Positions 29,311 through 35,945 of a DNA stretch of 64,000 bases are shown in pieces. A program made the translations under genes and the position numbers. Source of the stretch: Hemiscyllium ocellatum (Eukaryota); assembly GCF_020745735.1 (NCBI RefSeq), contig NC_083435.1, forward strand, positions 24,179,231-24,243,230, read 5' to 3'. Position 1 is the first letter of the stretch; every line of letters begins with the position of its first letter. Under the pieces are notes generated by a model. It was not told the DNA's origin, ran no database searches, and saw only the letters and a list, made by a program, of their open reading frames with translations.

Positions 29311-29560
29311 GTAAGAATCAGAGAGAGGGGAATATGGAAGTGAGGGGACAGAGTGAGTGTGGGGGAATCTCCAGTACTTGGGAGTACAGGGCACTGTGGG
29401 GAATGGAACTGATTGAATCCCCACACACGCATACACTTAAAGACACATCTTGTTCCCTGTCTGATCTTCCTTTGATTGACTGACCCAGGCCAGGTCTAAT
29501 ATTGATCAGTAAACCCACCGCACACACTCACATCCTCACTGACTGAATATCGATTGAATG

Positions 29561-30006
29561 AGAGAGATTAGTGTGTTTTGAGAAGATTTGTGGCTCAGGT
29601 TGAGATTTTGGATGTAGGTTTTCTCGCTCAGCTGGAAGGTTCATTTCCAGAGTTTCATCAGCCATTTGTGAGGACACTAGTGAGAGAAGGTCATGTCTTT
29701 TTGTGGCTAGTTGGTGGTCATGTATCCTGGTGGCTAGTTTTCGGCCTGTTTGTCCAATGTAGTATTTGTTACAGTCCTTGTATGGTATTTTGTAAATGAC
29801 ATTAGTTTTGCTTGTTGTCTGTATCGGGTTTCTCAAGTTTATTAACTGCTGTTTTAGTGTGTTGGTGGGTTTGTGGACCAAATATTGAACAACAGAAGCA
29901 ATCATCCCAACACCCACAAACGAAGCTTCCTTAGAACATTATTTCAATGAGCCAAGACTGCAGCCCAGAAGAATTACACAGAGCAGAGGAAAATCACCCA
30001 GACCGT
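29561..30006. mobile_element. Penelope-like element, left part (inverted GIY-YIG arm 29561-29878 on minus, plus-strand RT C-terminus 29879-30006)
   Basis: ORF 29528-29917: NVIYKIPYKDCNKYYIGQTGRKLATRIH. The plus part (..EENH..) continues after the ERV. Confidence 0.8.
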
Positions 30007-30713
30007 TGTGAGAAACTAAGCTCACTCACACCAATAATCTCAGTCCGAGACAAGATCTGAAGCAGCAGTATTATTTATTATACACTTGCAAGCATGGTGT
30101 CTAAAATAGACACACAGAGTTTAGCAAGTACGTATCTTAAATATAATTCATTTCTCTTTCCCTCCTCCCATTGCTCCTTCCCTGTTTACATCTCCCACTA
30201 CTCTAAACCCGAGTGTTTATCTCTGGCCTCATCCGGCCTTGTGCATGACAAAATGTATGTCCTGCTTGGCCGTTTCACCACATCCCTCTGTGGTCTATTA
30301 TTATATATCCTCGCCCACTGCCATCTGCTTCCTTGCTTGCTAAAGCAACATTTCCTTCCATTCTTTACCCATCCTGAGCCTTACAACCTCTTGATGGTGG
30401 TCTTTTTTGTTTTTGCAGAAGCAGGAACCAGATACTTGTAACTGTTTGGACAGACATATCTAGCTTAACCTACACCCCTCCCCTCACAGCCCCTTATCTA
30501 TTTGTCTGTAACATCTACCAATGTTTGCAGGCACATTTCATTCTTGTATGCACATTTTAGCTAATACAAAAACAATTATGTATTTACTTCACATAGTTTT
30601 CATTCTTGTTAACTCAGCTCCTGGCTGAAACAATTATACACTGGTGTGAGTTCATTTACCTTGCATAAGTAATTATGATTGCAGAAGTAACACTACTTTA
30701 CCTATATCCCACA
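30007..30713 (-). repeat. ERV 3' LTR
   Basis: TGTGGGATATAGG..AGTTTCTCACA on minus, preceded by PPT AAAGAAAAAGGGGGAAAT (30731-30714). Confidence 0.92.
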
Positions 30714-30849
30714 ATTTCCCCCTTTTTCTTTAATTACCATTTGTTATCTTCTGCAGTTTTCTTATATGTCACTTCCAAATTAACGAGTATCTTTCCCAAA
30801 ATTTCATTTATTTTGGTAATCTCCCCGTGGTCACTTATTCCTTCATTGT

Positions 30850-31621
30850 TTAACAGGTAGAGCCCTTCTTTCCATTGCTCGTTAAGGGCATATGTTTCAT
30901 TAAGGCTGTCTCAATCAGTCTTTGGGTGAGCCCTCATATACAGGGTATGATACAACAGCCAATGGCTACCAATACCCTGACTACTACTACTATCTGGGAA
31001 GTAAGGATGGAAACTACCACCCCCTTCCACCTTCCAAACCAGGATTCAAGCCATCCCGTGAGAGATGCGTCTACTCCTGAATTTTCAGCCAAGTTCCTCT
31101 GCTAAGGTAGTCAATCCCTTAAGGCCCGAGTAATTGAACCATCAGGTGCAGTGTTATTAGGAATAAAGGTACAACAGCTTCCTCCTAACATCACACATAC
31201 ACCCCTTTTTCTGCTAAAATCATATCAAGGACCATTCTGTTTTCCCATGCCATCCTACCTGTCGCATCAAGCTGGTCTGATATTCCTTTAACCGCATCTC
31301 TTGTATAATTTATAAATCGCTGTTGATTATAGAAAATGTAATTTACCCAATCTACATTTTTATTAATTGTTACCCACCAAAAGAGAGCTGACTCAAAGCC
31401 TGCTGCAATCTGGTTACGAGCCTTGAACTCATCAGGTACCCCCTGACCCCCCAGGGACTTTTATAGAATCAAGATAAATTCTGTCATTGAAAGAAGTGTC
31501 TAACAGTGATCTCTTACTCCTTCCCTTTTTCCCTACTATCTTTTCCTTCTCAAATGCCAGGGTAAATGGAATCGCCAATTGTACAATTGCACATATCCCT
31601 CTCCAATCCGGAGGTAGGGTG
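30850..31621 (-). pseudogene. env: ERV env remnant (SU end, furin site, TM ectodomain and anchor)
   Basis: TLPPDWRGICAIVQLAIPFTLAF..RSKR (31521-31510), GVPDEFKARNQIAAGFES.., ENRMVLDMILAEKG (immunosuppressive-domain-like), CVMLGGSCC (CX6CC). Several frameshifts. Confidence 0.88.
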
Positions 31622-33697: not shown

Positions 33698-34403
33698 TGT
33701 GAGAAACTAAGCTCACTCACACCAATAATCTCAGTCCGAGACAAGATCTGAAGCAGCAGTATTATTTATTATACACTTGCAAGCATGGTGTCTAAAATAG
33801 ACACACAGAGTTTAGCAAGTACGTATCTTAAATATAATTCATTTCTCTTTCCCTCCTCCCATTGCTCCTTCCCTGTTTACATCTCCCACTACTCTAAACC
33901 CGAGTGTTTATCTCTGGCCTCATCCGGCCTTGTGCATGACAAAATGTATGTCCTGCTTGGCCGTTTCACCACATCCCTCTGTGGTCTATTATTATATATC
34001 CTCGTCCACTGCCATCTGCTTCCTTGCTTGCTAAAGCAACATTTCCTTCCATTCTTTGCCCATCCTGAGCCTTACAACCTCTTGATGGTGGTCTTTTTTG
34101 TTTTTGCAGAAGCGGGAAACAGATACTTGTAACTGTTTGGACAGACATATCTAGCTTAACCTACACCCCTCCCCTCACAGCCCCTTATCTATTTGTCTGT
34201 AACATCTACCAATGTTTACAGGCACATTTCATTCTTGTATGCACATTTTAGCTAATACATAAACTATTATGTATTTACTTCACATAGTTTTCATTCTTGT
34301 TAACTCAGCTCCTGGCTGAAACAATTATACACTGGTGTGAGTTCATTTACCTTGCATAAGTAATTATGATTGCAGAAGTAACACTACTTTACCTATATCC
34401 CAC
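33698..34403 (-). repeat. ERV 5' LTR
   Basis: Near-identical to 30007-30713 (7 substitutions seen by eye plus the terminal base). Confidence 0.92.
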
Positions 34404-34780
34404 CAGTGTGTAGTCAAAAAGAATGGGAACCCAATGAACACAGTCCGCTGATTTCTCAGCAACAAACCCAAACAAGCAGACAAAACACATCCAGAAACCG
34501 TAGCCACTCACCCCGACATCAAAGACATCTGGGAAATGACTGCCAGATGACTCAGACCCCTTGGCATCATGGTAGCCAACAAACCCACCAACGCACTAAA
34601 ACATCAGCTAATGAACTTGAAAACCCTGTACAGACAACTAGCAAAACTAATGTCATTTACAAAATACCATGCAAGAACTGTAACAAACACTACATCGGAC
34701 AAACAGGCAGAAAACTAGCCACCAGGATACATGAACATCAACTAACCACAAAACGACATGACCCTCTCTCACTAGTATCC
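34404..34780 (+). mobile_element. Penelope-like element, right part (GIY-YIG)
   Basis: NVIYKIPCKNCNKHYIGQTGRKLATRIHEH. Joins the left part across the ERV (EENH..|..KKNG). Confidence 0.85.
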
Positions 34781-35362
34781 TGTCAGTCTAATTCCCCACC
34801 CCTCCTGAACCGGTCCCACCCTTCCAGTCACTCTTAAACCCTGTCAGACTAATTCCCCTTCCCCTCCTGATCCTGTCCCACCTTCCCAGTCACTGTTAAA
34901 CCCTGTCAGTCTAATTCCCCTCCCCTCCTGACCCTGTCCCACCCTCCCAGTCACTGTTAAACCCTCTCAGACTAATTACCCTCCCCTCCTGACCCTGTCC
35001 CACCCTCCCTGTCACTGTTAAACCCTCTCAGACTAATTCCCCTCCCCTCCTGACCCTGTCCCACCCTCCCAGACACTGTTAACCCCTGTCAGACTAACTT
35101 CCCTCCCCCCTCGACCCTGTCCCACCCTCCCAGACACTGTTAAACCCTGTCAGACTAATTCCACTCCCCTCCTGACCCTGTCCCACCCTCCCAGACACTG
35201 TTAACCCCTGTCAGACCAACTTCCCTCCCCCGCCTGACCCTGTCCCACCCTTCCAGACATTGATAAACCCTGTCAGACTAATTCCCCTCCCCTCCTGCCC
35301 CTGTCCCACCCTCCTAGACACTGTTAAACCCTGTCAGACTAATTCCCCTTCCCTCCCCACCC
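34779..35362. repeat. 61-bp minisatellite, about 9.5 units, in the last intron of gene B
   Basis: Same unit as 2158-2592. Confidence 0.95.
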
Positions 35363-35595
35363 TGAAGTGATTGCCTTGTGTCTCTCCATTCCTAACCTTG
35401 TGGGTTTCCTGGGCCCCACTACAGGTCATTCCTGGAGCCTCATCGCAGAACAATGGAATTCACCTGTTCCAGTGTGAACATGGACATCATTGTCTGTCCT
35501 TCCATATCACAGCATACACACAGAATTACAGCTCATTGTTCACACCCAATTCCTTCAGGACTGAGATCAATTTTTCTGGGAATGTATTTCCACAG

Positions 35596-35945
35596 GTTGA
35601 ACAGCGGATCCCAGATCCCCAAGTTTGGATCCTGGCTCTTCAAGAGAGACCTTCTCAAGTCGTGTTTCCATCCCGTCCCAGAAATGTGTGCAGTGTCACC
35701 ATCAGAGGGATCCTCACGATGGTTCCTCCCTCACACTTTCTCATCTTCACTGTCTTCAGTGGGTCACTGATTGACCTGAAATGAGGCAACATCCTGAGGG
35801 AACTCAGAGACAGTTTTTATATTGAAAGAAATTGATTTTGCATCTGTCGTTAACAAATTTCAAATGTTATGCAAATCTCTGTACATAAATATCAGTATTA
35901 CATATTCTAATTCTTAGAAAAATATATAAATATTATAAATCTGAG
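35596..35945 (+). CDS. Predicted terminal exon of gene B (GT TGA; stop 35598-35600) plus 3'UTR, 3' end approximate
   Basis: Intact acceptor gtatttccacag| homologous to 2826. Phase-1 joining to the TM exon gives ..WRG*. Splice usage is inferred. Confidence 0.5.

What the first reader, a model, noticed from the sequence alone, without database searches (positions are those of the whole stretch)
29311..35600. Gene B has lost both cytoplasmic exons and is predicted to be almost tail-less
Seen: B intron 5 matches gene A only up to 29560 (A ~617). After the Penelope/ERV block the sequence resumes inside the minisatellite (34779). The equivalent of A ~618-2170, which holds both cytoplasmic exons, is missing, and I found no homologue further downstream. 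The native terminal-exon acceptor (35595) is intact, and phase-1 splicing gives AGA G|GT TGA, a 326-aa protein ending KRPWRG*. Established: the tail Tyr/Ser motifs drive endocytosis and trafficking, and HLA-G is a short-tailed non-classical molecule with slow turnover. Inference: a TE-associated deletion created a surface-stable, tail-less class I without destroying the ORF.
Basis: partly seen in the sequence, partly recalled or inferred. Interest (0 to 1): 0.8.

Follow-up and report, generated by a model that had tools for sequence, protein, structure and literature searches.

The report
Shark class I gene without tail exons
One copy of a many-membered shark-specific non-classical MHC class I gene family has lost its two small cytoplasmic-tail exons next to transposon insertions and is predicted, as public annotation already predicts, to make a membrane protein with almost no tail; whether that matters biologically is untested.

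Summary
The window is from the epaulette shark, Hemiscyllium ocellatum. Gene B (14354-35600, + strand) has intact leader, alpha1, alpha2, alpha3 and transmembrane (TM) exons. Its homology to tandem neighbour A stops at about 29568 and resumes at 34779 inside a 61-bp minisatellite. Between lie two Penelope-like fragments and a 4.4-kb LTR element. Both cytoplasmic exons (A 1299-1331 and 2040-2075) are absent, and nothing like them occurs elsewhere in the window.

Splicing the TM donor to the intact terminal acceptor gives 326 aa ending KRPWRG. This is 100% identical to RefSeq model XP_060706338.1, so the product is already annotated.

The open frame is not luck. All 3' exons are phase 1 and the terminal exon starts GT-TGA, so any phase-1 donor spliced there stops after one residue. 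A paralogue that keeps a tail exon has an annotated isoform with the same KRPWRG end.

The closest bamboo-shark gene keeps both exon regions within 1.3 kb. The ancestral loss was therefore probably only about 0.6-0.7 kb and is lineage-specific.

"TE-associated" is supported by adjacency only. "Surface-stable" is untested. B has lost both canonical poly(A) hexamers that A carries. I rate this a new member of a known kind, of modest interest.

The parts
14354..14405 (+). Gene B leader exon (17 codons + 1 base, phase 1)
   Evidence: tblastn with relatives' leaders plus a GTAAGT donor. Part of the 100% match to P0163.
15619..15879 (+). Gene B alpha1 exon (261 nt)
   Evidence: tblastn of shark class I relatives. 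AG/GT borders.
28309..28584 (+). Gene B alpha2 exon (276 nt). Intron 2 before it is 12.4 kb and full of LINE and other repeats.
   Evidence: Pfam MHC_I, E=4e-19. AG/GT borders.
28702..28980 (+). Gene B alpha3 exon (279 nt, C1-set Ig domain, both cysteines present)
   Evidence: Pfam C1-set, E=7e-18. PDB class I hits. Cysteines invariant in 31/31 relatives.
29203..29310 (+). Gene B transmembrane exon, ending ...IIVWKRPWR + G (phase 1). Donor GT at 29311-29312.
   Evidence: 91.7% identical to the TM exon of C. plagiosum locus L001.
29311..29568 (+). Remaining start of intron 5, homologous to gene A 368-~625 and to Chiloscyllium L001/L002. The left breakpoint is at its end.
29569..29917 (-). Penelope-like element fragment, antisense to gene B. 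It is a 5'-truncated piece that keeps part of the GIY-YIG domain. Its 3' end sits at the left breakpoint.
   Evidence: Pfam GIY-YIG, E=7e-4, below the curated cutoff. Alignment with two other copies.
29918..30005 (.). Unassigned 88 bp between the Penelope-like fragment and the LTR element
   Evidence: No similarity to gene A, to the other arm, or to anything else in the window.
30006..34403 (-). LTR retroelement, antisense to gene B. LTRs at 30006-30712 and 33697-34403 (707 bp, 7 mismatches). The internal part is 2,984 bp with no intact gene. pol and env are not detectable, gag shows only as a weak zinc-knuckle trace, and no ORF exceeds 99 aa.
   Evidence: Orientation comes from a primer-binding-site-like stretch and a polypurine tract read next to the LTRs (inference from sequence). 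No clear target-site duplication.
34404..34779 (+). Second Penelope-like fragment, sense to gene B. It is truncated at both ends. Its 3' side is cut internally exactly where the minisatellite begins, which is the right breakpoint.
   Evidence: Pfam GIY-YIG, E=2.7e-3, below cutoff. 90.7% inverted match to 29671-29874. The other two copies continue past this point.
34779..35364 (+). 61-bp minisatellite, 9.6 copies. It starts in a different unit phase from A's array (2158-2596, 7.2 copies).
   Evidence: Tandem Repeats Finder. Self-BLAST.
35596..35960 (+). Gene B terminal exon, with acceptor AG at 35594-35595. It begins GT TGA, so the stop is at 35598-35600. The 3' limit is approximate. The two canonical poly(A) hexamers of A are mutated here.
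248..367 (+). Gene A transmembrane exon (reference copy)
   Evidence: Exact match to the C-terminus of XP_060706646.1.
1299..1331 (+). Gene A cytoplasmic exon 1 (G-SPNGTYTTAP). Absent from B.
2040..2075 (+). Gene A cytoplasmic exon 2 (TSEVSDAASS, stop inside). Absent from B.

Best explanation
Gene B is a real member of a large, shark-wide, multicopy non-classical MHC class I family in the epaulette shark. It is probably the lineage that shark immunogeneticists call UEA, but that name was not tested.

In the Hemiscyllium lineage the short stretch of its last introns that carried the two cytoplasmic exons was lost. In the ancestor this stretch was probably about 0.6-0.7 kb. The gap now holds two Penelope-like fragments in head-to-head orientation and a younger antisense LTR element. 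The left break coincides with the 3' end of one Penelope-like fragment. The right break cuts the other fragment internally and lands in the minisatellite, so at least one deletion or illegitimate join followed the insertions.

Every 3' exon of the family is phase-1 symmetric and the terminal exon begins GT-TGA. The TM donor therefore splices to the untouched terminal acceptor and the frame closes after one glycine. The product is a 326-aa type I membrane protein whose cytosolic part is only KRPWRG. The stop lies in the last exon, so the mRNA is not a nonsense-mediated-decay target.

Shown here: the anatomy, the loss, the splice model and its identity to the RefSeq model, and the family context. 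Inferred: that this is the main transcript, and that the protein reaches the membrane. It also lacks the family's conserved S-P-S-G-T-Y-T-T-A-P / acidic-serine tail, so whatever sorting or signalling that tail mediates would be lost too. Whether the result is longer surface residence is a guess by analogy with short-tailed mammalian class Ib molecules.
For: - Homology break and resumption.
- No copy of either tail exon in the intron or downstream.
- A's tail exons validated against XP_060706646.1.
- Canonical AG/GT borders at all B exons.
- Joined exons give 326 aa, 100% identical to XP_060706338.1. Isoform X2 (XP_060706339.1) has the same end. The annotated CDS span of 21,247 bp equals 14354-35600.
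- More than 100 annotated relatives in 13 shark species.
- Among 54 models in which the WK-basic anchor motif was found, tails are 21 aa (15 models), 12-13 aa (18 models) or 7-10 aa (4 models). Only B's two isoforms have 1 aa. A later cluster look-up added P0271, a tail-less isoform of a different gene.
- Tail Tyr present in 23/31 full-length relatives.
- B departs from the family at 6 of 154 conserved columns (median 4, maximum 15), so its ectodomain is not degraded.
- C. plagiosum locus L001 matches B at 90-96% from alpha2 to the start of intron 5. It keeps the cyt1 and cyt2 regions, the minisatellite and the terminal exon within 1.3 kb, with no transposon block.
- The terminal exon starts xT-TGA in A, B, the C fragment and L001.
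Against: - No transcript, protein or population data could be examined. The RefSeq entry is an automatic model, and the same pipeline produced an obvious read-through fusion next door (P0272).
- Both canonical poly(A) hexamers of A's terminal exon are mutated in B. Only weak variants remain.
- The new last intron is 6.3 kb of transposon sequence and contains a sense-strand AATAAA at 31162. A cryptic acceptor at 35558 would give a 70-aa tail (read).
- The family turns over quickly. Fragment C lies 23 kb away and intron 2 of B has swollen to 12.4 kb.
- In L001 the cyt2 region has a 1-nt length difference from A that breaks the cyt2 reading frame. It is a draft assembly, so this may be an error. 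Many B-type-TM relatives use only cyt1. Tail shortening was therefore already under way, which fits relaxed constraint as well as it fits adaptation.
Confidence: 0.7

Rival explanations
1. Gene B is a duplicate on its way out. The loss of the tail exons is one step of neutral decay in a birth-and-death family. The frame stays open only because of the family's exon-phase design, and the gene has little or no function.
For: - The open frame is explained by phase-1 symmetry plus GT-TGA, not by selection.
- Both canonical poly(A) hexamers are lost.
- Introns are transposon-laden: a 12.4-kb intron 2 and a 6.3-kb last intron.
- A dead fragment of the same family lies nearby.
Against: - The five coding exons before the terminal exon (976 nt) have no stop or frameshift, and every splice site is canonical.
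- B deviates at conserved family positions no more than its relatives do: 6 of 154, median 4.
- RefSeq lists two isoforms, which usually reflects transcript alignments. This could not be checked here.
Confidence: 0.3
2. B is expressed but ends differently from the model. Possible forms are intron 5 retained (adding 57 residues before a stop at 29481-29483), a cryptic acceptor such as 35558 (70-aa tail), or exons or polyadenylation within the inserted transposons.
For: - The ORF runs on from the TM exon to 29483.
- A whale-shark partial model reads through the same donor (P0164).
- There is a sense-strand AATAAA at 31162.
- The sequence at 35550-35559 offers a pyrimidine-rich AG.
Against: - The donor and the native acceptor are the same as in A, where they are used with the tail exons.
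- Both RefSeq isoforms of B, and isoform X2 of a paralogue, use the TM-to-terminal join.
- The LTR element and one Penelope-like fragment are antisense, so their own signals do not face the gene.
Confidence: 0.15
3. The junctions are assembly artefacts, for example a collapse or mis-join in the minisatellite or in repeated transposons, and the real gene keeps its tail exons.
For: The right junction lies in a 61-bp tandem array next to repeated elements, which is a classic trouble spot.
Against: - The block has an orderly structure: paired 707-bp LTRs at 99% identity, with flanks that continue cleanly.
- There are no Ns in the window.
- B's minisatellite is longer than A's, not collapsed.
- The left junction lies in unique sequence.
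Confidence: 0.05

Closest known systems
HLA-G and other short-tailed non-classical class I molecules of mammals (e.g. Mamu-AG)
   Same: A non-classical class I heavy chain with a normal ectodomain and membrane anchor but a cytosolic stub of about six residues. It therefore lacks the tyrosine and serine features of the ordinary tail. The comparison rests on established knowledge and was not tested here.
   Different: - In HLA-G the short tail comes from a premature stop within a tail exon. Here both tail exons are physically gone.
- The lineages are unrelated, shark-specific versus primate.
- No data here bear on expression site, turnover or receptor binding.
Shark multicopy non-classical class I lineages (UEA, UBA) described by Almeida, Ohta, Flajnik, Verissimo and colleagues (PMC10751288; PMC12562908)
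   Same: All close relatives are shark proteins, with many copies per genome. The genes sit in tandem arrays. The alpha2 disulfide is absent across the family, as expected of a non-classical lineage.
   Different: The papers that define UEA are not in the held library, and no named reference sequence came back from any search. The lineage name is therefore an inference. Nothing in the literature I could read mentions a tail-less member.
Isoform X2 of a paralogous epaulette-shark gene (XP_060707107.1, P0271)
   Same: Same length (326 aa) and same C-terminus...WKRPWRG. It is evidently made by joining the TM exon directly to the terminal exon.
   Different: In that gene the form is one of four annotated isoforms, and the gene still has cyt1 (isoform X1 ends ...TTAPS). 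In B it is the only form the DNA allows with the native splice sites.
Transposon-associated exon deletions in vertebrate genes (retroelement insertion with target loss, or later illegitimate joins at repeats)
   Same: Both breakpoints abut retroelement fragments, and one lies in a tandem repeat.
   Different: No signature identifies the mechanism. The LTR element has no target-site duplication. The two arms are 9% apart, and the right arm is cut internally. Several events are superimposed.

Membership tests
MHC class I heavy chain | alpha1-alpha2 MHC_I fold domain | tested here: met
   Pfam PF00129 on the alpha2 exon, E=4e-19. PF00129 is precomputed for the identical protein P0163.
MHC class I heavy chain | Membrane-proximal C1-set Ig domain with its cysteine pair | tested here: met
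   Pfam PF07654, E=7e-18. Class I chains among the PDB hits. Both cysteines present and invariant in 31/31 relatives.
MHC class I heavy chain | Single-pass membrane anchor followed by basic residues | tested here: met
   The TM exon encodes a 21-residue hydrophobic stretch followed by KRPWR. The WK-basic anchor is conserved in the family.
Classical (peptide-presenting, polymorphic) class I | alpha2 disulfide (Cys101-Cys164 equivalents) | tested here: not met
   The first cysteine is absent in 31/31 family members. The second is present in only 3/31, B included, so B has an unpaired cysteine.
Classical (peptide-presenting, polymorphic) class I | High allelic polymorphism, single or few loci | not testable with these tools
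   There is one genome only. The family has many loci per genome, which argues against a classical gene.
Shark UEA non-classical lineage | Shark-restricted, multicopy, MHC-linked | tested here: inconclusive
   Shark-only close relatives and many copies per genome are shown. Linkage to the MHC and identity with named UEA sequences could not be checked.
Short-tailed class Ib (HLA-G-like, a functional category) | Encoded cytosolic tail of only a few residues in the main product | tested here: met
   Met at the level of gene model and DNA. The tail exons are absent, the product ends KRPWRG, and it is identical to the RefSeq model.
Short-tailed class Ib (HLA-G-like, a functional category) | Transcript and protein actually made; altered endocytosis or turnover | not testable with these tools
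Penelope-like retroelement | GIY-YIG endonuclease domain at the C-terminus of the element's ORF | tested here: inconclusive
   Both arms hit PF01541, at E=7e-4 and 2.7e-3, but below the curated cutoff. Three copies in the window align over this region.
Penelope-like retroelement | Reverse transcriptase domain | tested here: not met
   The fragments are 5'-truncated and hold no RT. No Pfam RT hit appeared on the ORFs scanned.
Endogenous retrovirus / LTR retroelement | Paired LTRs with TG...CA ends, primer-binding site and polypurine tract | tested here: met
   707-bp LTRs at 99% identity. The ends and the adjacent PBS-like and purine-rich stretches were read from the sequence and indicate minus orientation (inference).
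Endogenous retrovirus / LTR retroelement | Target-site duplication | tested here: not met
   The flanking 4-6 bases differ.
Endogenous retrovirus / LTR retroelement | gag, pol, env coding capacity (needed to call it an ERV rather than another LTR element) | tested here: not met
   The only hit is a sub-threshold zf-CCHC match (E=0.007) on one minus-strand ORF. No pol or env was found, and the longest ORF is 99 aa.

The most novel reading that the evidence does not exclude
The family's 3' end may be a modular switchboard. Phase-1 symmetric alpha3, TM, cyt1 and cyt2 exons combine with a conserved stop at bases 3-5 of the terminal exon. Alternative splicing then yields secreted, tail-less, half-tailed and full-tailed forms. 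On this reading, gene B is a paralogue in which a genomic deletion has hard-wired the tail-less isoform, and it has been kept by selection as a dedicated, constitutively tail-less class Ib molecule. That would be subfunctionalisation of a splice variant into its own gene.
Probability: 0.2. Interest if true: 0.5.

Novelty: new member of a known kind. Interest (0 to 1): 0.3.

Why it matters
If gene B is expressed as modelled, it is a natural tail-deletion variant inside an old, poorly understood shark class Ib family. That family's cytoplasmic motif (S-P-S-G-T-Y-T-T-A-P plus an acidic-serine stretch) is conserved across shark orders. Comparing B with its tailed neighbours would give a ready-made contrast for asking what the tail does in the oldest vertebrates with an MHC.

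The broader and more solid point is the exon-phase design that makes tail length and membrane anchorage freely variable in this family. If B is merely decaying, the case is an ordinary example of transposon-driven erosion in a tandem gene array. It is also a caution that an open reading frame here says little about function.

Tried and rejected
- I looked for the missing exons elsewhere in the window by BLASTN (word size 7) and by motif scans of all forward frames. Nothing was found.
- The A 692-1207 to 50807-51509 match turned out to be an intronic repeat private to the A lineage. It is not a displaced piece of B.
- I considered a twin-priming-like single insertion for the two inverted Penelope-like arms. 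I rejected it because both arms cover the same region of the element and differ by 9%.
- I considered recombination between two LTR elements as the cause of the deletion, given the missing target-site duplication. It would not explain the internally cut right arm, so the question is left open.
- I tried to assign the lineage name. The two defining J Immunol papers are not held, and the MBE 2023 supplement labels such genes only 'MHC-Ib'.
- I tried to fetch the genomic DNA around the RefSeq gene, but the file was too large and only the gene span was returned.
- C. plagiosum locus L002 has long N runs after the position matching A 1888.
I reached the same end by searching with the alpha2 exon by reference and then with a returned relative.
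- No structure prediction was made, as it would not bear on the tail question.

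
Full report
**Where we are.** The window has no Ns. Searching with the alpha2 exon and then with a returned relative found more than 100 annotated class I proteins from 13 shark species. One of them, P0163 (XP_060706338.1, epaulette shark, Hemiscyllium ocellatum, assembly GCA_020745735.1), is 100% identical over 326 residues to the protein I obtain by joining gene B's predicted exons. 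Its annotated coding span is 21,247 bp, which is exactly 14354-35600 of the window.

**Anatomy of gene B.**
- The exons are: leader 14354-14405, alpha1 15619-15879, alpha2 28309-28584, alpha3 28702-28980, TM 29203-29310, and a terminal exon from 35596.
- All borders are AG/GT.
- Pfam calls MHC_I on alpha2 and C1-set on alpha3, and solved class I chains match alpha3.
- Intron 2 is 12.4 kb and packed with LINE reverse-transcriptase debris.
- The TM exon ends in phase 1 (AGA G|gt). The terminal exon starts GT TGA, so the protein ends ...IIVWKRPWRG.

**Gene A as the yardstick.**
- The window starts inside gene A.
- Its TM exon (248-367), cytoplasmic exon 1 (1299-1331) and cytoplasmic exon 2 (2040-2075, which contains the stop) translate to 60 residues. 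These are exactly the C-terminus of RefSeq XP_060706646.1.
- Downstream lie a 61-bp minisatellite (2158-2596) and an untranslated terminal exon whose acceptor is at 2826/2827.

**The observation.**
- Self-BLAST matches A 331-617 to B 29274-29560 at 85%. It then matches A 2158-3342 to B 34925-36123 at 91%, and about 6 kb of downstream sequence at 93-96%.
- A four-way alignment with two bamboo-shark loci puts the last shared base near 29568.
- B's array starts at 34779, in a different unit phase from A's. It is longer, at 9.6 against 7.2 copies.
- No trace of either tail exon exists in B's 6.3-kb last intron or downstream, by nucleotide search or by motif scan.
The break is about 8 bases further right than stated. 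A's 1.55 kb overstates the loss, because A 688-1213 and the SINE at 1387-1711 are insertions private to the A lineage. Both are shared with C. plagiosum L002 and absent from L001.

**What fills the gap.**
- 29569-29917 is a 5'-truncated Penelope-like fragment on the minus strand, with a sub-threshold GIY-YIG hit.
- 30006-34403 is an LTR element with 707-bp LTRs that differ at 7 positions.
- Stretches next to the LTRs look like a primer-binding site and a polypurine tract. A weak zinc-knuckle hit lies on the minus strand. Together these indicate that the element is antisense to the gene.
- Its 2,984-bp interior has no ORF above 99 aa and no detectable pol or env. 'LTR element' is therefore safer than 'ERV'. 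I did not count individual stops or frameshifts, because no reference protein was aligned.
- It has no clear target-site duplication.
- 34404-34779 is a second Penelope-like fragment on the plus strand, 90.7% identical to the first in inverted orientation. Two other copies continue past its end, so it is cut internally exactly at the minisatellite.
- The left break thus looks like an insertion end. The right break requires a later deletion or illegitimate join.
- The LTR pair (1% apart) is much younger than the arms (9% apart) or than the A/B duplication (4-15% apart).
- 'TE-associated' is therefore fair as a description of adjacency, but no mechanism is demonstrated.

**Why the frame survives.**
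- The alpha3, TM, cyt1 and cyt2 exons all begin and end in phase 1.
- The terminal exon begins xT-TGA in A, in B, in the dead C copy and in C. plagiosum L001. Any of those donors joined to it therefore stops after one residue.
- The annotated proteins show the full series:
  - ...YQWG (no anchor).
  - ...KRPWRG (no tail).
  - ...TTAPS (cyt1 only).
  - The full 21-residue tail.
- One tail-less model, P0271 (XP_060707107.1), is an isoform of a different epaulette-shark gene that still has cyt1.
- So B's intact ORF is a consequence of family design, and the tail-less form is not unique as a product. What is unique is that B's DNA allows nothing else with the native sites. Among the 54 models where the anchor motif was found, only B's two isoforms have a one-residue tail. 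P0271 was fetched later.

**Family context.**
- The first alpha2 cysteine is missing in 31 of 31 full-length relatives and the second in 28 of 31, while the alpha3 pair is invariant. The family is therefore non-classical.
- Published work describes two expanded shark class Ib families, UBA and UEA (PMC10751288, PMC12562908). UEA is the likelier name, but I could not test it.
- The tail motif S-P-S-G-T-Y-T-T-A-P is present in most relatives across several shark orders, with the tyrosine in 23 of 31. A distant class I representative shows a similar Y-x-x-A-P (P0042).
- B's ectodomain is not degraded. It has 6 departures at 154 conserved columns, against a median of 4 and a maximum of 15.

**History.**
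- B is a mosaic. Alpha1 and alpha2 are closest to A (75% and 82%). The TM exon is closest to the upstream neighbour's type (70%, against 39% to A).
- C. plagiosum contig L001 matches B at 90-96% from alpha2 through the TM exon into intron 5. It keeps the cyt1 and cyt2 regions, a short minisatellite and the terminal exon within 1.3 kb, with no transposon block.
- If L001 is the counterpart of B, the loss happened in the Hemiscyllium lineage and removed only about 0.6-0.7 kb.
- In L001 the cyt2 region differs from A by one base in length, which breaks the cyt2 reading frame. It is a draft assembly, so I give this little weight.
- Many relatives with B's TM type use cyt1 only. Tail shortening therefore seems to be a trend in this subgroup.

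**Signs pointing the other way.**
- A's two canonical poly(A) hexamers (3138 and 3245) are both mutated in B. Only weak variants remain.
- The last intron now holds a sense-strand AATAAA.
- A dead fragment of the family lies at 58622-60834.
- The annotation pipeline that produced B's model also produced a read-through fusion of the upstream gene with A. A RefSeq model is therefore not proof of a transcript.

**Verdict.** The structural claim is right and reproducible. The product is already in RefSeq, though apparently never discussed. The preserved frame is explained by family design. The functional claim (surface-stable, HLA-G-like) is an analogy without data. I put 0.7 on 'real deletion, tail-less product as the main coding outcome'. 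The rivals are: decaying duplicate 0.3 (it overlaps the main explanation on structure), other 3' ends 0.15, and assembly artefact 0.05. Interest is modest at 0.3.

Noticed in passing
window 2827, 35596, ~58790 (minus strand); L001 ~10780: The terminal exon of this class I family begins xT-TGA in every copy seen, and the alpha3, TM, cyt1 and cyt2 exons are all phase-1 symmetric. RefSeq models accordingly show secreted (...YQWG), tail-less, cyt1-only and full-tail forms. This looks like a built-in modular 3' end.
   Followed up: partly
window 14354-29310 compared with P0272 (XP_060706646.1): Gene B is a mosaic. Its alpha1 and alpha2 are closest to gene A (75% and 82% aa). Its TM exon is of the type carried by the upstream neighbour (70%, against 39% to A). 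This points to exon-scale recombination or conversion between tandem paralogues, with a switch in intron 4.
   Followed up: partly
window 3138-3143 and 3245-3250 versus 35917-35922 and ~36028: Both canonical poly(A) hexamers in gene A's terminal exon (AATAAA, ATTAAA) are mutated at the aligned positions in gene B. Only weak variants remain nearby.
   Followed up: partly
window 58622-60834, minus strand: A third class I copy ('C') is reduced to a fragment. It has intron 2 sequence, the first 30 or so codons of alpha2 cut off at about 60290, one minisatellite unit and a terminal exon. It is a dead relic of the same family.
   Followed up: partly
window 1-3400 and protein P0272: RefSeq XP_060706646.1 (658 aa) is a read-through fusion. 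A complete upstream class I unit ending ...KRPWRG is spliced straight onto gene A's alpha1. It shows both that automatic models here can be chimeric and that TM-exon donors of this family are modelled joining distant phase-1 acceptors.
   Followed up: no
window 7700-7869 and 40869-41041 (minus strand) versus 14269-14439: Inverted copies (80-82%) of gene B's leader exon and its upstream sequence sit in the duplicated segment downstream of both A and B. One still translates to a leader-like peptide (40901-40954).
   Followed up: no
window 688-1213 and 50807-51509: A ~520-bp repeat sits in gene A's intron 5. It is also present in C. plagiosum L002 and absent from L001 and B, and it has a 73-78% copy at 50.8-51.5 kb. 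It is an unclassified interspersed repeat.
   Followed up: no
window 30006-34403: The LTR element has nearly identical LTRs but no target-site duplication. Its present flanks may therefore not be its original insertion site.
   Followed up: partly
window 15880-28308: Intron 2 of gene B is 12.4 kb, against about 3.6 kb in C. plagiosum L002. It is swollen by LINE reverse-transcriptase fragments (about 25.4-27.8 kb) and other repeats. A C. plagiosum gene model (P0009) exonises the stretch equivalent to 23900-24007.
   Followed up: no
window 28981-29020: A (GT)n microsatellite lies immediately after the alpha3 donor site of gene B. Several draft-genome models of relatives read through into it (C-termini such as ...GKGLECVCV).
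   Followed up: no
L001 10340-10375: In the C. plagiosum counterpart of B, the cyt2 region is one base shorter than in gene A, which breaks the cyt2 reading frame. This is either a draft-assembly error or an independent step of tail erosion.
   Followed up: no
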